A DNA stretch of 64,000 bases from Octopus bimaculoides (taxonomy: Eukaryota), in the NCBI RefSeq assembly GCF_001194135.2, contig NC_068994.1, positions 21,431,628-21,495,627 of the forward strand, given 5' to 3'. Shown piece by piece: positions 1,640 to 56,210 of this stretch; position 1 is the stretch's first letter; every line of letters begins with the position of its first letter. The notes below the pieces were generated by a model. That model ran no database searches. It saw nothing but the letters and a program-made list of their open reading frames with translations, and had not been told where the DNA came from. A program made the translations under genes and the position numbers.

Positions 1640-4414
1640 CGGGTCAAAATGCTAGTAATACATATAAAGCAAGTTGATGTAGCTATATGCATAATATATT
1701 GTCTGCCAAACACCACAAAATATGATGGAAAATTTGAGGAAAGCCTCAAACACATCGATGAGGTATTAACAAACCTAGATCAGAACATCAACATACTCTT
1801 CCTGGATGATTTCAATTTCACACATATCAAATAGCCAGAAGGCCACATCCTCTCTGGGATGTCACTGCATGAACAAAAGCATGTACAGTCACTATTTGAA
1901 CTTACTAATAAATTGTTTATGGAGCAAGTGATACTCAGGCCAACCAGGGGGAAGATCATATTGGACCTATGCTTCACAAATAATGTGGACCTTATCCATA
2001 ATGTAGGTTACACCAACGGCACTCTCAGACCACGAAATTGTTGAACTAACTATGTATGGTCCTGTGCAAACTGTTGGTATCCACCCTATCAGGAGGACTC
2101 GAGCTTTATGCAATCTGAATTTCCATAAGGCAAAATGAGAATCGATCTGCAAAGAGATCCACAAACGAAACTGGTCCAACATTCTGAGTATGCAAGACAC
2201 TGATCTGAAACTCAGCCAGTTTATGTCAACAGTGCAAGCTATATGCACTAAATATGTCCCAGAAAGAAAGGCCAGCACACAGAAAAATCCTCATGCGACG
2301 TAGGTCAAAGATTTCAAAGCGGCTGAATAGGCAACTGAAGTATAAAGAGAAGTTTGTCTTAACACGGACGCTCCTAGAAATTGAAAGCAAGATCAAACTC
2401 TCTCATGAAAGGGAAAGAGCAGAGAGAGAGAGAGAGAGAGAGAAAGGCTGTGGAAAGCATAAAAACAAATCCCAAAGCTTTCTATAAATTTGCAAAGGAA
2501 ACAGCTACAATACAATATAAAATAGGACCATTGTTCCAAGGAAAAGACTCACTGACAGCAGACCAAGGAAGGATAAGTGAGATACTCAGTGAACAATTTA
2601 AAAGTGTCTTCACTTCCCCACCTTGGACACATGCAGATAAAAAATCCAGCTGAATTCTTTGATATTGCAGCTCTAAAAAAGGGGTAGCCAGCCATTGATT
2701 ACATCAACATTGAGGAAATAGATGTAACAGTAGCCATAGACGAAATGAGCTCATGCTCTGCTACTGGTCCTGATGGCTTCCCAGCTATTCTCCTAAAGTT
2801 GAGTAAGCAGGCTTTTGCGAAACCACTTCAGATACTTTTCCAAAGTTTCCTCGCAAATGGTATACTTCCTAAAAAGCTGAAAGACGGTATTATATGCGCT
2901 ATCCACAAAGGTGGAAGCAGAGCAGAAACCAAAAACTACAGGTCAATCTCTATGACTTCGTACATCAGTAAAGTCATGGAGCGAATCATCAGAACGAAGT
3001 CGATAATGTTCCTTGAAGAAAACAACCTACTGAACAATACTCAGCATGGCTTCCATCCAGGAAGAAGCTGCCTCATACAGATCCTTCAGCACTATGACTG
3101 GGTTTTGAAGCAGCTGCTTGATCATTCAGATGTCAGTGTGATATACCTTGACTTTGCAAAGGCATTTGATAAGGTAGAACATGGCATGATAAGTCATAAG
3201 CTATGAGACCTTGGCATCACTGGTAAACTAGGAAAATGGCTGCATGACTTCCTTAAAAACAGAAGTCAGGTAGTTGCAGCCAATGACGCTCTTTCTGAGG
3301 AAACTGAAATCGTAAGTTGTGTCCCCCAGGGAACTGTTCTGGGGCCATTACTGTTCATAATAACCCTCTTAGACATACCCACAGTCACTCGGACAGCCAC
3401 TGTCACTAGCTATGCTGATGATACAAAATTATCAGAGGCAATAAAAAATCAAGAGGATGTTACAAGCTTACAACAGGATCTAAACTCAATATACAAGTGG
3501 ACTGAAATAAACAACATGCAGTTTAATGCTGGAAAATTTCAAGCACTGCACTATAAACTCAGTACAAATACAGTACAATCTACATTTACAGGACCCAAAG
3601 GCACTACAATCCCAGAGTCACAGGCAGTGAAAAACTTGGGGAACAGCATGTACAATGGCGCATCATTTTATATGCACATAAGCAAGATGGCAGCAAAGTG
3701 CAGACAACTGGCAGTATATATATTGAGGTCCCACAAGACAAGAGACCAAGAAACTATGTTGACCCTGTAGAGAACATTTGTTCTCAGCCACCTGGACTAC
3801 TGTTCCCAGTTATGGTCACCACATAGTGCCAAACTAACAGTGGAGCTTGAAGCAGTCCAACGCCACTACACTAAAAGGATTGAAACAGTGCAGTGGATGA
3901 GTTACAGGGATAGGCTGAGAAAACGACAGCTCTGGAGCGAAGGCACGACAGATATGCAATAATATACATATAGAAATTCCTAAAAGGGCTAGTATCTAAC
4001 TTTGGCATTGAGTGTTATACAAATGCCAGAACTGGCCGCCATTGTATTGTACCAAAGGTACCATCCACTCCATCTAAACTCAGGACCAGGTATTGCAATA
4101 GTCTAGAGTTCAAAGGTCCACAGTTTTTCAATGCCCTGCCACAAAAACTAAGAAATTTGCACAAGGTGGAAGTAGATGTCTTCAAAAAGGAACAAGATAT
4201 CCTCCTCTCCAGAATACCAGAAGAACGAACAGCCTGAAATGAGGTACGGACGAGAGCAGCGGAATCAAACTCGATTATACACCAAATGTACCAAAAGCTG
4301 GGAAAAGGGCAAATACAGGAGTGGTCATGTGAAATACCCAGACTGAGGAAGTTAGAAAGACCATGGTGGTGCTCCAGCATGAGCACAACAATATGGCTGA
4401 AATGAGTAAAAGAG
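1640..4414 (+). mobile_element. 5'-truncated, decayed CR1/L2-group LINE (end of APE domain, RT domain, 3' UTR)
   Basis: LDLCFTNN, GPDGFPAILLK, NYRSISMTS, QHGFHPGRSC, VIYLDFAKAFDKV, VPQGTVLGPLLF and YADD (3411-3422). Multiple stops and frameshifts; an (AG)n tract at about 2420-2443. Confidence 0.92.
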
Positions 4415-4417
4415 TAT

Positions 4418-4448
<31 letters not shown>

Positions 4449-4654
4449 CATATAAATACATATATATATGTATATACATAGACATATATATATATACACA
4501 TGTGTATATCTAAACATATATGTATATACACATATATGTACATATACCAGAGTAATCATATAAATGCGAAATAAGGTGGAAAAAATAGTACTCAAATACC
4601 AGAGATAGAGTAATATATTTATAAACATATATATACATACATATATGTACATAA

Positions 4655-4697
<43 letters not shown>

Positions 4698-4808
4698 AAT
4701 ATATATATACATAAATATATATACATAAATATATATATACATATATATATACATATACATAAATATATATATACATATATATATACATATACATAAATAT
4801 ATATATAC

Positions 4809-4839
<31 letters not shown>

Positions 4840-5384
4840 CACATNNNNNNNNNNNNNNNNNNNNNNNNNNNNNNNNNNNNNNNNNNNNNNNNNNNNNNNN
4901 NNNNNNNNNNNNNNNNNNNNNNNNNNNNNNNNNNNNNTATATATATATAAACATATATACATATTTATATATAGATATACATACATATTTATATATACAT
5001 ACATATTTATATACACACACACACACATATATGTATAAATATATAAATTTAGTGAATGGAGTAGAACGCATATGTTAACTGCATACTTTTATTTCCAACA
5101 TATGTTTCGAAGATTACAAGTTATACCTTCCATAGGAATCGGTGATGTTGTTAAGAATGTAATCTTCTCTTCAGGGAAATGCATATATATATACATACAT
5201 ATACATATATATACATATACACATATATATTTATATACATACACATATATATATTTATATACATACATACATATATATTTATATACATACATATATATTT
5301 ATATACATACATGTACATACATATATACATACACAGGCACACATATATATACATATACAGACACACATATATATACATATACAG

Positions 5385-5433
<49 letters not shown>

Positions 5434-5735
5434 CACATATATATAAACATACAAAAATATACATATACATACATATATACACATATATATACATACACAT
5501 ATATATACATACACACACACATATATATATATACATACACACATATATATATACATATACACATATATTTATACATACACACACACATATATATACACAT
5601 ATATATACGTACACATACATACACATATACATACATATATATACATATACATATTTATATATACACATACACACACGAATATACATGTATAAATACATAC
5701 AGGCACATATATAGATACACACACACACACACATA
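4418..5735. repeat. Compound (TA)/(TACA)/(CA) microsatellite field with assembly gap
   Basis: Directly visible simple repeats; the source of the spurious YI/HT ORFs. Confidence 0.95.
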
Positions 5736-7035: not shown

Positions 7036-7161
7036 TATACATATATGTACACACACACATATATATAGAGAGAGAGAGATTCTACAATAGTTAACTAAGA
7101 CAAGACAAGCAAAGATAAATTATATCAAATATAAAAACAAATGTCAAAGAAATGTACTTAC

Positions 7162-9021
7162 GGAGTATGCAAGTAAAACATCCCGCTGGTCATCAACACT
7201 AGTAATTTCTACAGAGGGTTTTGCACCAACTGCTGCTTGCTGCTGCATCTGACCTGGGAACGATGTACTCCGTCGGAACTTGGAAGGAGAAATGAGAGAA
7301 GTCTGACCAAGCTGGGGATGAGACTGGCCTTGGTTAGGGTTCAAAGGCCCTTGGTGTCCAAGGGAGGCACCCTGGTGAGAATGAGTGCCATGTGGTCCTA
7401 CTGGATTACCACCACTCTGCTGTTGCTGTTGTTGTCCTGGCTGGCTTTGAAAAGTTGGTTTTTTAATTGGAGCCACAGGAGGGTTTATACTTGGGACAGA
7501 GCGACGCTGCTGATGATGTTGTTGTGCTGCTGGCTGCTGTTGAGGCATGCTAGCCCAAGGAGAGAGACCAGCAGCGGCTTGCTGTTGGTGATGTTGGTTT
7601 TGTTGAGAAGCTAATGACACACCCTGTGACTGTGACATAGTCACTCCAGGACTGACAATAGTACTTTGCCCTTGAACACCAGTGCCGCCACCTGGAGTTC
7701 TTGCACCGCCACTTTGACTATTCCCACTGTTATTGCCTCCCCCTGGCTGAGCTGTTGCAGTTGCTGTGGTCCACAGTGATGGCTGAGGTGCTGAACTCCA
7801 TGCAGGATATGTTTTAGAGGTGTTAAGTAAAATATTTGCTTGCTGCTGTTGTCGCTGTTGTTGCTGCTGCTGTTGAAAGTTATGATGGGCTGTTATCGCT
7901 CGTCTCTGAGGGGCTGTAGCTTGCTGCTGAGCAGCCATGTGTCCAAGGCTGCTCATATGCGCAGCAGCAGTTATCCCTGTGCCAAATAAGGTACTAGGGT
8001 TAGGGGGAAATTGCTGAAAGGCAACAGTTCCATTTAATGACTGGAAGCCCTGCAGGAAAGTATCTTCAGCTGATGCAGTTGACCAAAAATTTGGCACTAC
8101 TGATGCAGCAGAGGAAGATGAGGCTGGTGAAGATGATGATGATGTAATAGATGATGAATATGAAGATGAAGAGGAAGCAGCTACACCTGCAGCAGTCAAT
8201 GATGTCACTCCAACAGCTGGATTTGGAGCAACAGAATCTGTAGTCAAACCAAGGTGTAATGGAGATGAAACCACACCCCCGAGAAGCTGATCTGCTACTG
8301 TAGTGGGCTGCTGTGATGATACTGACCCAGAGCCAACTGGTGTCCCTGGTTGTTGTTGCTGCTGCTGTGGCATCTGAGCTTGCTTCTTTTTGTTGCTACT
8401 ATTATTAGGAATTGCAATATTGCTGCAGTTGTTACCAGCCCCACTGCTGTTGTTACTGGTGCTACTATTATTGTTGTTGCTGCTGCTGATATTGTTGCTG
8501 CACACTACTGCAGCTGTTGTTGCCACAGCAGCAGTTCCAGTCACACTGCTGCTTGTTTCACTACCGTTAACACCAGTCCCCACTGTACTGTTGCTGCTGT
8601 TGTCGCCCCCTGTTGTTCCGTTGTCTCCAACCACTACAACCCCACCAACACCATCCATAACTTTACCCAAACTCGCAGAATACAATGTGCCCAGTCCGCT
8701 ACTGCAGCTTTCTCCGTTACAGTTGTTGCTACTGGCAACTATATTCACTGTTGAATTATTATCTATTAAGTCACTTGAGTCAGTGCAGGCCGCCAGCGGC
8801 ACACCAAACTTCAATAAATTAGTAGTGGAACAGTGTTGAGGAATTTGATTACAAAGTCCTCCTAGTACACCAAGTTGGCTGGAGTGCTCAACTTGCTGGC
8901 TACTGTCACTATCAGACATCGTGGACACCTGCTGGACATGCAAATCACTGAAGCTGAGGGATGCTGGGTGATAAAGGTTTTCACAGAAAATGGATTGATC
9001 CAAAAGACTTCCATCTTGCAT
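7162..9021 (-). CDS. CPEB2/3/4: First large coding exon of a CPEB2/3/4 (Orb2-like) cytoplasmic polyadenylation element-binding protein; N-terminal low-complexity/prion-like region, 620 aa, phase-0 intron follows
   Basis: Uninterrupted ORF with first in-frame ATG at 9021 (MQDGSLLDQS, cf. CPEB3 MQDDLLMDKS). EDTFLQGFQSLNGTVAFQQFPPNPSTLFG matches the recalled vertebrate CPEB2-4 motif DSFFQGITPVNGTMLFQNFPHHVNPVFG. VAPIKKP...ISPSKFRRSTSF resembles ISPLKKP...PPKFPR. PolyQ, S and N tracts. Donor TCC|GTAAGT at 7162/7161; the ORF-track tail VSTFL* is intronic. Confidence 0.88.
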
Positions 9022-9759
9022 TTTATTGTAAACTGAAAATAGTATATTGGTTGATGTGCTTAACTTTACAAAATAAACTATTGACACTTCTAAACAGATA
9101 CAAAGTACTTCAGCACTTTTCTCAACCCTAATTAGTCTCTGTGTGTGTATGTGTCCTTTAACTTCTTTTCAGTTATCCAGCAGTCAGCTTTAAAATGAAA
9201 CAAACAAATATTTAATTGTCTTGTTTTGATTTTCTTTGTCATTGCCAAAAAAAAAAAAGAAAGCAACAATTACTTTGGAAAAAAAAAAAGCTAAGTCAGG
9301 ATAAGAAAAATCATTGCTGGTATCAGTTAAGGTTACTTAAAGAGCATCTAGAAAGACAGAAGCAGGAAAAAATTCTTGTCTCACCATGAGGTGGCTAAGT
9401 TTTTCAAATTTCTTCTGGTTGTATAGTTTATTTTGCAGCCAGCAGCATCTAATTTAAGAGAGAGAAAGAGAAAGATGAAAAGAATATTTCAAAATCATCT
9501 GGTATTATCAATTTGAATAAAACTTGAAATTAAATAATAAAATTTGAATGAAAGTGACTTGAATCATAAAATGAACAGTGACTGGTAAATTCTACCATGG
9601 AAAATTCCACCAGGTAAATTTCACCATAGGTAAATTCCACCACGGTATATTCCACCAAGGTAAATTTCACCATAGATGAAATTATCATTATTGTTATCAT
9701 CATCATCATTATTATATTATATGGGTTACGATATTATGGAAATAAAAAAAAGAATGCAT

Positions 9760-10440
9760 AAAAAATAATATCAATAATGTCAATGAATACAAAAAATACG
9801 AAGGAGAAAAAATAATTAAGGAACAACCACACAAAGAAATACACGGTGAATACTTTAAACACCTAAATGAGGAAGCAGTATCAAAAAGATACTCATTGAA
9901 ATTTATAAAACAAAGCAAATACTTAATGATAGATAAAAATATTATACAGTATTTACAAGGCAGAAACAACTATTATGGAAGAAAAAAAGACATGCAGATA
10001 TTGTAAAATACAACGGGAATATCGAACATATGGCAATACAATGTGGAAAAATAGCACACACGAAATATAAAGAGAGAGACGATAATATAACCAAGATAAT
10101 CAATGTGAACCTACTACAGCAATATAACATATCAAAAAACCAGAAAATCAGAAATGTACAAATAGAGGAGATAACAACTGAAAAGGTTAAGATTTTAGTA
10201 GATAGCCCAGTAATAACACCAAACAATATAGAAAACAATAAACTCGATATTACAATATTTGACCACAAAAGAAAAGAAACAATAATAATCAAAATGGAGT
10301 AACATCGACAAGAATCTGAACAAAGTCGAAATGACAAAAATACTAAAGTATAATAGACTTGCTAAAGAAATTAAACAGATAAATGGATATAAGGTTAAAA
10401 TAATACCATTTACAATGACTTGGGACGAAATGGTCTCAAA
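9760..10440 (+). mobile_element. RLE-type (R4-group-like) non-LTR retrotransposon 3' fragment: Zn knuckle plus restriction-like endonuclease
   Basis: EIHGEYF, CRYCK...IEHMAIQC, ERDDN (RH-motif position), NKLDITIFDHKRKE, KYNRLAKEI, KIIPFTMTWD; frameshifted. Confidence 0.8.
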
Positions 10441-10444
10441 GAGG

Positions 10445-10873
10445 AAAAAGAAAGACGAAATGTACATTTGGTGCAGTGTAGTCAACAGGGACAGTGCCTA
10501 AGATGGGAAGAATATGTTGGTCAGTTGCAAAATCACATGGAAAGAACTTTGGGTTTGGGAACAAGCAAGAACATCCTTCCTGATCAAGCCCACCTTCAAC
10601 ATTTTGCTGTCACCAGTCAACTTAGTCCGGTGGAACATACAAACGGCTGATGAATGTAAATGCGGAGAGAAAGCGATGATGAGACATATCCTGTCAAACT
10701 GCAGGCTAGCACTGGACAGATATACATGGCGTCACAACCAAATCCTCAGTGTTATAAGCACAGCACTCAAGGAGAAGATTGAGCAGTACAATAGGGGAGA
10801 GTACCCGAAAGTGGAAAAGTGCAGAAGCATATACTTCCAGAAGGAGGGAAAAGGACATAAGACCAAGTATTGA
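10445..10873 (+). mobile_element. HERO-clade non-LTR retrotransposon fragment (Zn knuckle region)
   Basis: SQQGQCLRWE, KITWKELW, SFLIK..FNILLSPVNLVRW, CKCGEKAMMRHILSNC..ALDRYTWRHNQIL. Confidence 0.8.
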
Positions 10874-12639
10874 TCCACGGTCTAGAGAAACTGACCACGG
10901 TGATTATTAGTGGGAGCGGCTTATATTGGAAGTCTGTCCATAGGTGGAATTTATCATGGTGGAATTTACCTATGGTGAAATTTACCTGGGGGTTTTCTGT
11001 AGTGGAATTTACCTAGAACCTAATGAACACTACTGAATAAAGACTGTATTGAGTAACTCAGCCACCTTTGCTTAAGTAACTTTATTATGACCAATCCACA
11101 AACTGATATACAAGATGTGTCATGTTTTCATCTAGTCTTCGACTACACCACATAGCATACAAGTTATGCAATATTTAATTGTGAGAACTACAGCAAAATA
11201 ATCAAGGAAGAAAGAGTGTTGGATGATTCGACAGGATCCAACAGGAGAGAGTAGCAGCCTTGTTCCAGTATCTCGGTTTTCACAAGGTTTCATCAGCTGA
11301 ATGCCCTTCTTAACATCAATCACTTTACAGAGTGTACTGGTCACATTGTTTTCATGGTACTAAGTGTTATAGAGGTTGTCTTGCCCTCAGCATGATTAAA
11401 GAGCTTTCTCACACTCTGCACTATGACAGCTCAATTTGAAGTATCAATCATAGAAGACAACCTAAATTTCTTTGTAACACAGAACAAGTATTGAATTAAC
11501 AATGTACATGTTCTTATCAAAATTACCTAAATTTATTATTGTGATAACCAAGAAAGAAAAGCTTATAACCATATAAAATGTAGCTTAAATTACTATCATG
11601 AACTATTCTGCATATGAGTACCAGTTCCAATTGGGATATCAAAGAATATTTGATGCTACAGAAAATGCTAGAAACTGAAAATATAATTTAGATGATGATT
11701 AAAATACATGAATATCTTAAAGAATAAATATTACACAGATTGGACAATTTCAAAAATATTCAAAATACTGTTCAGAATTTGCATACTTCTTTCATTATGT
11801 TACCAAGAAAATAAGTTTAATAAGAAAACCTAGTCAAATACATGTGCACTGTTACAATGAACTTGAGGCACAACCTGCATGTGTGTATGTATCAGTTAGT
11901 AGGGATCATAATGATTGTGGTCATAAGATAGGTAACTAATAAAATACTTCAAGGGAACACTATAAGATGAATTAATAGATTGACTGATTATAACAATATT
12001 CCATTCTTCTGTTACAAAATTGGAACAGTTCTGAACATAAAACAGGAACTTCACAACTCCAATTCTAGAAGTAACCTAAGTTAATTATCGCAAGCAATAA
12101 CTACAATAAAGTTAACAAGAAGGAAAGTGACAGTTCATTCCATGCTCCCCACATGTTTCTGAAGCAGAGTATTTTATGGATTACATGTGCAGTTATGTGT
12201 ATCACAAATGTGCATCACATCATCAGGCTATCAAACTGCACAGGTAACAAAATCAATTGTGCCAATATTCAATCCAGCAAAAATCAGAAGAGAAAACATC
12301 TTTAGTAAGAGTAGTAAAAAAAAAACCCAGCCAATCAAATGGCTTAGTTATAGTCCCATTCACCTGACAAGAAAAAAGGTGAGGTTATTATAATCACAAA
12401 CAGCTGAACAAAAGTTTACAGCTGCAATAACAGCTAACCTATGTCTGGCACACAAGATTATCAAATTGTGAAGTATAATCTCTCAAATTTAAGTAGAATA
12501 AAAACACTCACATACATAATGTAAAGTGTGTGTGTGTGTGCGTGCGTGCGTGCATGTGTGTGTGTGTGTGTGTAGATTTTTCTAAGTGTTTATTTAAAAA
12601 CTTTTTCGTGTATATTTACTCACACATTTTTCATCACCA

Positions 12640-18062: not shown

Positions 18063-18142
<80 letters not shown>

Positions 18143-18183
18143 AACATGTATGTATGTGATGTGTGTTTGTGTCTATCTATCTA

Positions 18184-18251
<68 letters not shown>

Positions 18252-20226: not shown

Positions 20227-20374
20227 TTTAGTTGTGCACCTGGTATAAAAAAGAGTTTAGTTGTGCACCTGGTATAAAAAAGAGTTTAGTTGTGCACCTG
20301 GTATAAAAAAGAGTTTAGTTGTGCACCTGATATAAAAAAGAGTTTAGTTGTGCAGCTGGTATAAAAAAGAGTTT
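20227..20374 (+). repeat. Minisatellite, 5 copies of 29 bp (TTTAGTTGTGCACCTGGTATAAAAAAGAG)
   Basis: Five adjacent near-identical units with no spacers. Confidence 0.95.
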
Positions 20375-55434: not shown

Positions 55435-56210
55435 ATTGAGTGAGAGAGTAGTGCATGCCATCAAAGTGACACTGGGGTAAAATATACGAAGCCCAGTATA
55501 CCCATCATGACTACCTGTCTGATAAGGGCACACCAGGCGCATGCATCAAAACCATATGTGCACGACATGGTGATCTCATATCACGATAAACAGTGCATGA
55601 CCTTGCAGGTGGGGCCCAGTTAGAATTTTCTTCAGGTCAAGCCCATCCTGTTCAAATGGTCCTTGAATAAGGGTCGTTTAAGGATGTTGAAGGAAACATT
55701 CATATTTCCAGAGGTGAATTATTCAAACCCCAAAGAATTCCTCTCAACACATGGCTATGATGCTCCCCCACTACTTCTGCTCGTGAAGCCCATCTTTTAT
55801 ACCAAGGCAAAACAGTGCACATGATAACACTACCAATCAGTTAAGATCAGAAGCCATGAGAGCCAGTGCCTTTATTTTTATTATTATTATTATCATCATC
55901 ATCATCATCATCATCATCAGTAGTAGTAGTAGTAGTAGTATTGAGTGAGAGAGCAGTGCATGCCATCAAAGTGACACAGGAGTAAAATATACAAAGCTCA
56001 ATATACCCATCATGACTTCCTGTCTGATAAGGGTACACCAGGCACATGCATCACAGCCATATGTGCATGACATGGTGATCTCATATCAAGATAAACAGTG
56101 CATGACCTTGTAGGTGAGGCCCAGTTAGAATTTTCTTCAGGTCAAGTAGCCCATTCCACTTAAAAGGTCTCTGAATTAGGGTTGTTTAAGGATGTTGAAT
56201 GAATCACCCA
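55435..56210 (-). mobile_element. Two tandem copies (55435-55870, 55940-56210) of a non-coding interspersed repeat ending in (AAT)n
   Basis: Both begin on the plus strand with a triplet microsatellite and TTGAGTGAGAGAG.AGTGCATGCCATCAAAGTGACAC and align for about 270 bp. Confidence 0.8.

What the first reader, a model, noticed from the sequence alone, without database searches (positions are those of the whole stretch)
7162..9021. Cephalopod-type CPEB2/3/4 (Orb2) with a 620-aa single-exon prion-like N-terminus
Seen: one exon holding several polyQ runs (QQQQQQQRQQQQ, PQQQQQQP, GQQQQQQS), N/S tracts and Q/H patches, around a few islands that match vertebrate CPEB2-4 motifs. Established: Aplysia CPEB, Drosophila Orb2 and mouse CPEB3 use Q/N-rich N-termini to form functional aggregates linked to memory persistence. 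Inference: this is a very long, multi-module candidate functional prion domain in a large-brained invertebrate.
Basis: partly seen in the sequence, partly recalled or inferred. Interest (0 to 1): 0.75.

Follow-up and report, generated by a model that had tools for sequence, protein, structure and literature searches.

The report
Octopus CPEB2-4 gene, disordered first exon
This is the already-annotated first coding exon of the Octopus bimaculoides CPEB2/3/4 (Orb2-type) translation regulator; it encodes a conserved, disordered tail nearly twice as long as in other invertebrates, but its composition falls just short of standard prion-like cut-offs.

Summary
Window 7162-9021 on the minus strand is one 1860-nt exon, from ATG to a GT donor. 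It encodes 620 aa containing the quoted polyQ runs, N/S tracts and Q/H patches.

It is 100% identical to residues 1-620 of RefSeq XP_052828706.1, 'CPEB3 isoform X1' of Octopus bimaculoides. That protein's RRM and ZZ exons lie 32-71 kb further on, left of the window. The gene is therefore already annotated.

What is new in detail:
- Bilaterian short motifs are separated by low-complexity insertions seen only in Octopus and one unidentified cephalopod-like transcriptome. These motifs include the homologue of the human CPEB3 amyloid core and the ApCPEB4 PKA site.
- The N-terminal domain is 734 aa, against 369-446 aa in 17 other invertebrate orthologues.
- The exon is predicted fully disordered and is under purifying selection (dN/dS 0.12, no indels between Octopus species).

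The prion inference is only weakly supported:
- Q/N density (26 per 80 aa) and a PrionScan-type score (44.7 bits) both fall below the usual cut-offs of 30 and 50.
- Overall Q/N content matches the 'non-prion' Aplysia ApCPEB4.
- The annelid and nemertean orthologues score higher.

It is best read as a regulated self-association and condensation domain. Amyloid behaviour remains untested.

The parts
7162..9021 (-). First coding exon (620 codons) of the O. bimaculoides CPEB2/3/4-family gene; encodes aa 1-620 of XP_052828706.1 and XP_052828707.1
   Evidence: ORF and sequence. 100% identity over all 620 aa to P0001. Corresponds to L001 10001-11860.
9019..9021 (-). Start codon (context AATAAAATGC). 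It corresponds to the internal MQD(E) methionine of other invertebrate orthologues and to M1 of human CPEB3
   Evidence: The orthologous cephalopod-like transcripts carry an in-frame TGA two codons upstream of their ATG. Human CPEB3 starts M1QDDLLMDKSKT (PMC9166367).
7156..7161 (-). 5' splice site GTAAGT of intron 1 (about 32 kb; the next exon is at L001 43870-43944, outside the window)
8992..9021 (-). aa 1-10, MQDGSLLDQS: conserved N-terminal motif (MQDETLLEK in other invertebrates, MQDDLLMDKS in human CPEB3, where it forms a partly populated helix)
   Evidence: Alignment A1; PMC9166367.
8377..8991 (-). aa 11-215: segment shared only with the cephalopod-like P0002 (core MDGVGGVVVVGDNGT). Nothing else among 1.84 billion representative proteins matches it
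8308..8487 (-). aa 179-238: N/S tract plus KKK plus Q6. This is the most yeast-prion-like 60-aa window (44.7 bits, below the 50-bit cut-off)
8092..8307 (-). aa 239-310: aliphatic segment conserved between the two cephalopod-type sequences (DQLLGGVVSSPLHLGLT...), followed by a polyS tract
7981..8085 (-). aa 313-347, WSTASAEDTFLQGFQSLNGTVAFQQFPPNPSTLFG: homologue of the human CPEB3 amyloid core (W111-G148 of the L103-F151 core). It is the most conserved N-terminal island
   Evidence: PDB 8spa_A, E=0.0011, 17 of 35 aligned residues identical, E120/D121 conserved. W313, D320, F335, Q336, F338 and P340 are invariant in A1. bioRxiv 10.1101/2022.12.07.519389; PMC9166367.
7891..7905 (-). aa 373-377, RRAIT: invariant RRAI motif with an RRxS/T-type basophilic kinase consensus (the kinase assignment is an inference)
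   Evidence: R373, R374, A375 and I376 are invariant.
7840..7875 (-). aa 383-394, Q7RQ4 run, at an ancestrally Q-rich position (NFPQ..QQ in other orthologues)
7771..7815 (-). aa 403-417, KTYPAWSSAPQPSLW: conserved Trp-containing island (K403 and W408 invariant, W417 nearly so)
   Evidence: A conserved Trp cluster (W242/W252/W259) is reported for vertebrate CPEB3 (PMC9166367); the positional equivalence is inferred.
7612..7770 (-). aa 418-470: G/N/S/Q/T-rich insertion, absent from non-cephalopod orthologues
7492..7611 (-). aa 471-510: Q/H patches flanking the invariant W489, ending in the conserved RRSVP motif
7318..7452 (-). aa 524-568: Q6 plus a G/H/Q-rich insertion (5 His between aa 541 and 555), found only in the two cephalopod-type sequences
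7252..7296 (-). aa 576-590, LISPSKFRRSTSFPG. T586 is the positional equivalent of ApCPEB4 T294, an experimentally shown PKA site required for long-term facilitation in Aplysia
   Evidence: An identical KFRRSTSFPGQ is present in Aplysia P0043 with T at 294; PMC5075418.

Best explanation
**What it is**
The exon is the first coding exon of the annotated Octopus bimaculoides CPEB2/3/4-family (Orb2-type) gene. It encodes 620 of the 734 residues of the intrinsically disordered N-terminal regulatory domain. That domain sits in front of the RRM1-RRM2-ZZ RNA-binding module, which is encoded 32-71 kb downstream, outside the window.

**Anatomy**
- The domain is a string of ancient short linear motifs:
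  - the MQD-LL N-terminal motif;
  - the hydrophobic segment homologous to the human CPEB3 amyloid core;
  - RRAIT;
  - a Trp island;
  - RRSVP;
  - the KFRRSTSFPG PKA site.
- These motifs are spaced by low-complexity insertions seen only in Octopus and one cephalopod-like transcriptome: an N/S tract, polyS, three Q runs, and G/N/S/Q and Q/H/G stretches.
- The insertions nearly double the domain's length without changing its overall Q/N content.

**Proposed mechanism (inferred from the family, not shown here)**
- The domain drives multivalent, reversible self-association of the protein into translation-repressing assemblies.
- Basophilic-kinase (PKA-type) phosphorylation and the alternatively spliced Arg-rich 24-nt microexon tune the switch to translational activation.
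- The added low-complexity modules raise valency.
- Whether assembly proceeds to a self-templating amyloid, as in CPEB3 or Orb2, is open.
For: **Identity**
- 100% match to XP_052828706.1.
- The full protein has RRM_7, RRM_1 and CEBP_ZZ domains.
- Its RNA-binding domain matches human CPEB4 RRM1-2 at 4.5e-122, against 1.8e-51 for CPEB1.
- Exon map on L001.
- Intronless 3.1-3.5 kb transcript contigs from five SRA runs of a second cephalopod-like species join the long N-terminus to the RRM and ZZ domains.

**Disorder**
- AlphaFold2 gives mean pLDDT 43.4 and no secondary structure.
- Pfam finds no domain in the exon.

**Motifs and insertions**
- Alignment A1.
- PDB 8spa hit.
- T586 equals ApCPEB4 T294 (PMC5075418).
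- N-terminal domain 734 aa against 369-446 aa, with similar Q% and N%.
- Nothing in 1.84 billion representative proteins matches aa 1-210.

**Selection**
- dN/dS is 0.12 over the whole exon and 0-0.03 for aa 311-620.
- There are 4-5 substitutions and no indels in 620 aa between three named Octopus species.
- The flanking 2-kb non-coding stretches carry 17 and 21 gap openings.
- Q runs use mixed codons.

**Microexon**
- Isoforms X1 and X2 differ by ARAYGRRR.
- It is a 24-nt exon with AG/GT splice sites at L001 about 55.8 kb.
- Its mammalian counterpart controls the reversibility of CPEB4 condensates (PMC11711090).
Against: - No direct octopus RNA-seq or protein evidence was examined. The exon 1 to exon 2 junction rests on the RefSeq model and on transcripts of another species.
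- Condensation, phosphorylation and aggregation are all inferred from homologues.
- The Octopus species compared are close (dS 0.035-0.09), so the selection estimates rest on 15-37 synonymous changes.
- The species behind the second transcript set could not be identified.
Confidence: 0.85

Rival explanations
1. The exon encodes a true functional prion domain: a self-templating, SDS-resistant amyloid switch like Aplysia CPEB, Orb2 or CPEB3, with several Q/N modules, that sustains synaptic translation and memory in octopus.
For: - The CPEB3 amyloid-core segment is conserved, including the E/D pair and most hydrophobic pocket positions (bioRxiv 10.1101/2022.12.07.519389).
- Three clustered Q runs are more than chance gives.
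- The N/S plus Q window at aa 179-238 scores 44.7 bits, about twice the gastropod orthologues.
- A simplified PAPA-type score peaks at 0.082 near aa 173. The usual 0.05 threshold is recalled from memory, and no disorder filter was applied.
- The domain is disordered and under purifying selection.
Against: - It falls below both compositional cut-offs tested: 26 of 80 Q/N against 30, and 44.7 bits against 50 without the proline penalty.
- Overall Q/N content equals that of ApCPEB4, which is described as having no prion-like domain and acts in initiation, not maintenance, of facilitation (PMC5075418).
- The amyloid-core homologue is conserved in all orthologues, including ApCPEB4, so it does not single out octopus.
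- AlphaFold2 shows no helix or coiled-coil tendency.
- The Q runs are short (6-7) and flanked by P, G or R.
Confidence: 0.22
2. The low-complexity insertions are functionally neutral products of replication slippage in a tolerant disordered linker. Only the short conserved motifs matter.
For: - The insertions differ in length and sequence between Octopus and the second cephalopod-like species (for example aa 418-470 and aa 1-120).
- Lineage-specific growth of low-complexity regions in CPEB N-terminal regions is common in vertebrates (PMC11965684).
Against: - There are no indels and only 4-5 substitutions across 620 aa between three named Octopus species. The flanks carry 17-21 gap openings per 2 kb.
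- dN/dS is 0-0.03 in aa 311-620, which contains three of the insertions.
- Homopeptide runs use mixed codons rather than pure repeats.
- The insertions sit at the same positions in both cephalopod-type lineages.
Confidence: 0.1
3. The ORF is not a real exon. It is a chance open frame in repetitive DNA, or a pseudogene fragment.
For: Low-complexity DNA keeps several frames open; antisense ORFs lie at 7237-7614 and 8350-8839.
Against: - At 647 aa it is the longest ORF in the window by far.
- It has an exact ATG and a GTAAGT boundary.
- Orthologous first exons in many invertebrates end at the same position.
- dN/dS is 0.12.
- Transcripts in a related species carry the same architecture.
Confidence: 0.02

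Closest known systems
Aplysia ApCPEB4 (CPEB2-4 orthologue; P0043, 664 aa; PMC5075418)
   Same: - It is the closest experimentally studied orthologue in another mollusc.
- It shares all the N-terminal islands, including an identical KFRRSTSFPGQ with the PKA-site threonine (T294 in Aplysia, T586 in octopus).
- N-terminal Q% and N% are similar, and the RRM-RRM-ZZ module is the same.
   Different: - The octopus domain is 734 aa against 407 aa.
- Octopus has homopolymer Q, S and N runs and four large insertions.
- Octopus lacks the MGE/MGDYG leader that precedes the MQD methionine.
- ApCPEB4 is described as non-prion.
Human/mouse CPEB3
   Same: - It starts at the same MQD-LL motif.
- It has a homologous hydrophobic amyloid-core segment (8spa; 17 of 35 aligned residues identical).
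- It has a QnRQ4-type run, polyS and polyA tracts, a disordered N-terminal region, and the same RNA-binding-domain family.
   Different: - The human Q4RQ4 run lies at residues 16-24, directly after the N-terminal helix. The octopus Q7RQ4 run lies after the core segment.
- Human CPEB3 is P/A-rich; octopus is S/G/N-rich.
- The human disordered region is 426 aa.
- Prion-like behaviour is shown for CPEB3 and untested for octopus.
Mammalian neuronal CPEB4 (me4 microexon plus His cluster; PMC11711090)
   Same: - Octopus isoforms X1 and X2 differ by a 24-nt Arg-rich microexon (ARAYGRRR).
- The N-terminal domain is disordered.
- His-containing Q/H and G/H patches lie in the distal part of the domain.
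- The RNA-binding domain is most similar to CPEB4 (2mki).
   Different: - The octopus His patches are sparse (18 His in 620 aa), and their equivalence to HClust is not established.
- The microexon lies outside this window.
- pH-dependent condensation is untested.
Drosophila Orb2
   Same: It is the CPEB2-4 orthologue of flies. Its Q/H-rich N-terminal region forms the functional amyloid core.
   Different: The octopus Q/H patches are shorter and interrupted by A, P and G.
Aplysia neuronal CPEB (ApCPEB, CPEB1-type)
   Same: It is a molluscan CPEB with a Q-rich N-terminus linked to memory persistence.
   Different: - It belongs to a different subfamily: the octopus RNA-binding domain matches CPEB4 far better than CPEB1.
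- The literature describes the ApCPEB prion-like domain (residues 1-160) as very glutamine-rich (PMC9166367), whereas the octopus exon has 12.6% Q.
Vertebrate CPEB2 and the lineage-specific low-complexity expansion in vertebrate CPEB N-terminal regions (PMC11965684)
   Same: A long low-complexity N-terminal region has grown by lineage-specific homopolymer and low-complexity insertions. Predicted prion-like stretches in human CPEB2 reach aa 566.
   Different: The vertebrate expansions are P/G/A-rich; the octopus ones are S/N/Q/G-rich. The expansions are independent (parallel) events.

Membership tests
CPEB2/3/4 (Orb2-type) subfamily of CPE-binding proteins | C-terminal RRM1-RRM2 plus a ZZ-type zinc finger in the same polypeptide | tested here: met
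   P0001 has RRM_7 (1.4e-37), RRM_1 and CEBP_ZZ (4.4e-21) at aa 733-977. These exons lie outside the window.
CPEB2/3/4 (Orb2-type) subfamily of CPE-binding proteins | RNA-binding domain closer to CPEB2-4 than to CPEB1 | tested here: met
   Human CPEB4 RRM1-2 (2mki) scores 411.9 bits at 4.5e-122. CPEB1 (2mkh) scores 178 bits at 1.8e-51.
CPEB2/3/4 (Orb2-type) subfamily of CPE-binding proteins | N-terminal islands shared with subfamily members | tested here: met
   Hits to 30 orthologues, the invariant columns of A1, and CPEB3 8spa at E=0.0011.
CPEB2/3/4 (Orb2-type) subfamily of CPE-binding proteins | This exon is spliced to the RRM and ZZ exons in mRNA | tested here: inconclusive
   The RefSeq models X1 and X2 say so. 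Intronless transcripts of a related species join the homologous N-terminus to the RRM and ZZ domains. No octopus RNA-seq read or transcript was examined here.
Functional prion-like CPEBs (ApCPEB, Orb2, CPEB3) | Yeast-prion-like Q/N-rich composition (at least 30 Q/N per 80 aa) | tested here: not met
   The maximum is 26 per 80 aa, at aa 460-539. The criterion is as quoted in PMC8409284.
Functional prion-like CPEBs (ApCPEB, Orb2, CPEB3) | Compositional prion-domain score above cut-off (PrionScan, 60-aa window, 50 bits) | tested here: not met
   44.7 bits at aa 179-238 in my re-implementation from the published table, without the proline correction. The genuine PLAAC and PAPA programs were not available.
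Functional prion-like CPEBs (ApCPEB, Orb2, CPEB3) | Presence of the segment that forms the CPEB3 amyloid core | tested here: met
   aa 313-347 aligns to CPEB3 W111-G148. The segment is also present in the 'non-prion' ApCPEB4, so it does not discriminate.
Functional prion-like CPEBs (ApCPEB, Orb2, CPEB3) | Self-templating, SDS-resistant aggregation; activity-dependent oligomerisation; a role in memory persistence | not testable with these tools
   Needs SDD-AGE, ThT and electron microscopy, yeast Sup35C assays, and in vivo work in octopus.
CPEB4-type condensate-forming N-terminal domain with a neuronal microexon | Intrinsically disordered N-terminal domain | tested here: met
   AlphaFold2 mean pLDDT 43.4, no residue at 70 or above, no secondary structure. 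No Pfam domain.
CPEB4-type condensate-forming N-terminal domain with a neuronal microexon | Alternatively included 24-nt Arg-rich microexon | tested here: met
   X1 and X2 differ by ARAYGRRR. A 24-nt exon in phase 1 with AG and GT splice sites lies at L001 about 55805-55829. Tissue specificity was not tested.
CPEB4-type condensate-forming N-terminal domain with a neuronal microexon | Histidine cluster that interacts with the microexon | tested here: inconclusive
   Q/H patches lie at aa 471-505 and a G/H patch at aa 541-568. His is only 2.9% overall, and no alignment to the CPEB4 HClust (residues 229-252) was possible.

The most novel reading that the evidence does not exclude
Coleoid cephalopods independently almost doubled the disordered domain of their CPEB2-4 orthologue by inserting N/S, Q and Q/H/G modules that are now under strong purifying selection. 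This would run parallel to the growth of low-complexity regions in vertebrate CPEB2 and CPEB3. Together with the conserved CPEB3-type amyloid core, these modules would make the octopus protein a true activity-dependent functional amyloid or prion in a second, independently evolved large brain.
Probability: 0.2. Interest if true: 0.75.

Novelty: new member of a known kind. Interest (0 to 1): 0.35.

Why it matters
- CPEB2-4/Orb2 proteins are the best-supported candidates for protein-conformation-based persistence of synaptic change.
- The only mollusc orthologue studied, ApCPEB4, is short and called non-prion.
- Octopus carries a conserved version of the regulatory domain that is about 330 aa longer and richer in homopolymer runs. 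It also has the Arg-rich microexon that in mammals keeps CPEB4 condensates reversible.
- That gives a concrete, clonable construct for asking whether large-brained cephalopods use CPEB condensation or amyloid switching.
- It also gives a natural comparison set for what the added low-complexity modules do: octopus, gastropod, and the more Q/N-rich annelid and nemertean orthologues.
- As a genome feature it is ordinary, because the gene is already annotated.

Tried and rejected
1. **Other CPEB exons in the window.** tblastn with six orthologues and regex scans for MGDYG, RALSP and ARAYGRRR found nothing. All other exons lie outside the window.
2. **Unmasked homology search.** It was swamped by low-complexity word matches and gave only 6 hits. 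Masking the runs gave 30.
3. **Retrieving vertebrate CPEB3.** I used the last protein search on the 8spa peptide. It returned only a 56-aa fragment, so no vertebrate or Orb2 full-length sequence was available as a positive control.
4. **PLAAC and PAPA parameters.**
   - Toombs 2010 and 2012 and Alberti 2009 are not held.
   - I used the PrionScan table, without its proline term.
5. **Species behind the second transcript set.** I searched for SRR27666065/68/70/87, SRR24189495 and SRR11869390 and found no paper.
6. **RNA genes and other features.** Rfam and tRNA scans of the window were empty. The multi-frame 'ORFs' at 31.7, 39.5, 50.9 and 62.4 kb are runs of N.
7. **Antisense ORFs.** The ORFs over the exon were rejected as mirror artefacts of codon repeats, since they are poly-L and poly-V.
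8. **Literature.** Searches for octopus or cephalopod CPEB found only a 2008 retina western-blot paper and citations of reviews.
Full report
**1. What is there**

On the minus strand, an ORF spans window 7144-9087.
- Its first ATG is at 9021.
- The frame runs 620 codons to 7162, where a consensus donor GTAAGT follows in phase 0.
- The coordinates, the 620-aa length and every quoted string are correct:
  - PQQQQQQP at aa 218-225, QQQQQQQRQQQQ at aa 383-394 and GQQQQQQS at aa 529-536;
  - an N/S tract at aa 176-210 and polyS at aa 283-310;
  - Q/H patches at aa 471-505 and aa 541-568.
- Composition is S 16.8%, Q 12.6%, G 9.8%, A 8.9%, T 7.6% and N 6.8%.
- The Q residues cluster more than the composition explains: 0 of 20000 shuffles gave three runs of at least 6 Q.
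- The runs are encoded by mixed CAG/CAA codons, not pure repeats.

**2. Identity**

- Isoform X2 is XP_052828707.1.
- Orthologues more than 99% identical exist in O. sinensis and O. vulgaris.
- The window comes from chromosome CM046614.1 of GCA_001194135.2.
- The full protein has RRM_7, RRM_1 and CEBP_ZZ domains at aa 733-977.
- Its RNA-binding domain matches human CPEB4 RRM1-2 (2mki, 4.5e-122) far better than CPEB1 (1.8e-51). It therefore belongs to the CPEB2-4/Orb2 subfamily.

On the 91.5-kb locus L001, exon 1 is at 10001-11860.
- The remaining coding exons lie at 43.9, 47.0, 55.8 (a 24-nt microexon), 71.7, 72.9, 74.0, 74.8, 77.1 and 81.3 kb.
None is inside it.

Direct octopus transcript evidence was not obtained.
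- Five Logan contigs of 3.1-3.5 kb (SRR27666065, SRR27666068, SRR27666070, SRR27666087 and SRR24189495) carry an intronless 992 or 994-aa ORF.
- That ORF has the same architecture and the same insertions. They are therefore mRNAs of a second cephalopod-like species joining the long N-terminus to the RRM and ZZ domains.
- The source species could not be identified.

**3. Anatomy**

Alignment with 13 orthologues or fragments from molluscs, nemerteans, annelids and arthropods (A1) shows short conserved islands:

| Island | Residues | Note |
|---|---|---|
| MQDGSLLDQS | aa 1-10 | MQDETLLEK elsewhere; M1QDDLLMDKSKT in human CPEB3, where it is a partly populated helix (PMC9166367) |
| WSTASAEDTFLQGFQSLNGTVAFQQFPP... 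| aa 313-347 | homologue of the CPEB3 amyloid core |
| RRAIT | aa 373-377 | RRAI invariant |
| KTYPAWSSAPQ..W | aa 403-417 | Trp island |
| W489 and RRSVP | aa 489 and 506-510 | |
| SKFRRSTSFPG | aa 580-590 | PKA site |

- The second island is the only part of the exon that hits the PDB. It aligns to chain 8spa_A at E=0.0011, with 17 of 35 aligned residues identical.
- 8spa is the cryo-EM amyloid core of human CPEB3 (L103-F151). Deleting that core abolishes translational regulation (bioRxiv 10.1101/2022.12.07.519389).
- The acidic pair E120/D121 and most pocket hydrophobics are conserved in octopus.
- The last island is identical in Aplysia ApCPEB4, where T294 (octopus T586) is a demonstrated PKA site needed for long-term facilitation (PMC5075418).

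Between the islands, the octopus and the cephalopod-like P0002 carry insertions that the other orthologues lack:
- aa 11-215, including the N/S tract;
- aa 239-310, an aliphatic segment plus polyS;
- aa 418-470, G/N/S/Q-rich;
- aa 524-568, Q6 plus a G/H/Q-rich stretch.

An exhaustive HMMER search of 1.84 billion representative proteins gave only 25 hits.
- All but the weakest matched through aa 210-455; the weakest (E=4.4e-4) matched through aa 553-611.
- None matched aa 1-210.

The distance from the start to RRM1 is 734-737 aa in the cephalopod-type proteins, against 369-446 aa in 17 other orthologues. Q% (10.9) and N% (6.8) lie within the range of the others (7.5-15.5 and 4.8-10.8).

A single large first coding exon ending at this same position is the norm for the family. 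Read-through ORFs from many invertebrate genomes stop just after the homologous ...Q/S boundary. Only the length is special.

**4. Disorder and selection**

- AlphaFold2 with a 19-sequence alignment gives mean pLDDT 43.4, no residue at 70 or above, and no secondary structure. Pfam finds nothing.
- O. bimaculoides differs from O. sinensis and O. vulgaris at 4-5 of 620 residues, with no indel.
- A fourth octopod contig (L008) differs at 12 residues and has one Q deleted.
- Nei-Gojobori estimates:

| Comparison | Region | dS | dN | dN/dS |
|---|---|---|---|---|
| O. bimaculoides vs O. vulgaris | whole exon | 0.035 | 0.0042 | 0.12 |
| O. bimaculoides vs L008 | whole exon | 0.072 | 0.0092 | 0.13 |
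| both pairs | aa 311-620 | | | 0-0.03 |
| both pairs | aa 1-310 | | | 0.18-0.28 |

- The flanking 2 kb upstream is 92.6% identical with 17 gap openings. The first 2 kb of intron 1 is 86% identical with 21 gap openings.
- The low-complexity insertions are therefore maintained by selection, not drifting.

**5. Is it prion-like?**

- The best 80-aa window holds 26 Q/N, below the classical cut-off of 30 per 80 (quoted in PMC8409284).
- I re-implemented the PrionScan composition score from its published log-odds table (60-aa window, 50-bit cut-off; PMC3654983). The proline correction could not be reproduced and was left out. Results:

| Protein | Best 60-aa window (bits) |
|---|---|
| Octopus exon (aa 179-238, N/S tract plus Q6) | 44.7 |
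| P0002 | 41.5 |
| Haliotis | 22.8 |
| ApCPEB4 | 19.4 |
| Lineus | 51.2 |
| Owenia | 61.2 |

- A simplified PAPA-type average peaks at 0.082 near aa 173. It had no disorder filter, and the threshold is recalled from memory.
- The domain is therefore borderline. It is clearly more prion-like in local composition than the gastropod orthologues, but it is below the standard cut-offs and below two non-cephalopod orthologues.
- The conserved amyloid-core homologue is shared by all orthologues, including ApCPEB4, so it does not argue specifically for octopus.

**6. Most likely mechanism**

Shown:
- a disordered, selectively constrained, motif-plus-spacer domain attached to a CPEB2-4 RNA-binding module;
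- a conserved PKA-site motif;
- a conserved amyloid-core-type hydrophobic segment;
- an alternatively included Arg-rich 24-nt microexon (isoforms X1 and X2, ARAYGRRR).

Inferred from mammalian CPEB4 and CPEB3 and from ApCPEB4 (PMC11711090, PMC9166367, PMC5075418):
- The domain mediates multivalent, reversible self-association into translation-repressing assemblies.
- Phosphorylation and the microexon control dissolution and activation.
- The added low-complexity modules increase valency.
- Progression to self-templating amyloid is possible but unsupported (I put it at about 0.2).

**7. Comparison and novelty**

- The gene is already annotated.
- Lineage-specific growth of low-complexity regions in CPEB N-terminal regions is documented for vertebrates (PMC11965684), where predicted prion-like stretches of human CPEB2 reach aa 566.
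- I found no paper on cephalopod CPEB2-4 N-termini.
- This is a new member of a known kind, with one point of interest. The expansion is conserved, seen only in the cephalopod-type sequences, and parallel to the vertebrate expansions.

**8. Limits**

- No vertebrate or Orb2 full-length sequences were available as positive controls.
- The genuine PLAAC and PAPA programs were not run.
- No octopus RNA-seq was examined.
- The selection estimates rest on few substitutions.

Noticed in passing
window 9022-9087 and alignment A1; L002-L005 5' ends: Other invertebrate orthologues begin MGDYGF...RALSPVDF...NNQSLF about 40 aa before the MQDE methionine, within the same exon. In octopus the frame upstream of MQDG is closed. 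No MGDYG-type exon exists in the 55 kb upstream that the window covers. The cephalopod-like transcripts have an in-frame TGA two codons before their ATG. Cephalopods therefore seem to have lost this conserved leader and start like vertebrate CPEB3.
   Followed up: partly
L001 10001-81565 vs L007 (O. vulgaris); window 7162-9021: Synonymous divergence between O. bimaculoides and O. vulgaris is far below the non-coding divergence. dS is 0.035 in exon 1, and only 1 synonymous difference was found in 204 sites (dS 0.005) in the RRM and ZZ exons. Mismatch is about 10% in the first 2 kb of intron 1 and about 5% upstream. Possible causes are constraint from RNA editing or RNA structure, or exonic ultraconservation. 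Not resolved.
   Followed up: partly
L001 about 55805-55829 (outside the window): A 24-nt, phase-1, AG/GT-flanked microexon encodes ARAYGRRR and distinguishes isoforms X1 and X2. It looks like the counterpart of the mammalian neuronal CPEB4 microexon me4 (Arg-rich, 24 nt) (PMC11711090).
   Followed up: partly
L001 43870-43944 (outside the window): Exon 2 (NIPREMVSDNVVLWTDASHVEYLPV) is shared with the cephalopod-like P0002. Most other lophotrochozoan orthologues in A1 have a gap there.
   Followed up: no
proteins P0006 (Owenia fusiformis) and P0021 (Lineus longissimus): These annelid and nemertean CPEB2-4 orthologues exceed the prion-composition cut-offs that octopus misses. Owenia has 43 Q/N per 80 aa and scores 61 bits; Lineus scores 51 bits. 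They are better compositional prion candidates than the octopus protein.
   Followed up: no
window about 24.9 kb, 31.8-32.4 kb, 34.1-34.5 kb, 39.6-40.2 kb, 51.0-51.7 kb, 62.5-63.2 kb: These are assembly gaps (runs of N). They produce spurious ORFs open in several frames at once in the ORF list.
   Followed up: yes
window 2745-3206 (+): A reverse-transcriptase fragment (Pfam RVT_1, 1.7e-09) lies inside intron 1 of the CPEB gene. It is probably a decayed non-LTR retrotransposon.
   Followed up: partly
window 4432-4844, 5182-5735, 18085-18248, 20227-20374: Long TA/CA-type microsatellites lie in intron 1, and a (TA)n array lies upstream. There is also a 29-bp tandem repeat of 5.1 copies, 97% matching.
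   Followed up: no
window 7237-7614 (+), 8350-8839 (+): Antisense ORFs over the exon translate to poly-L, poly-V and poly-C strings. They are mirror images of the CAG/AGC codon repeats, not genes.
   Followed up: yes
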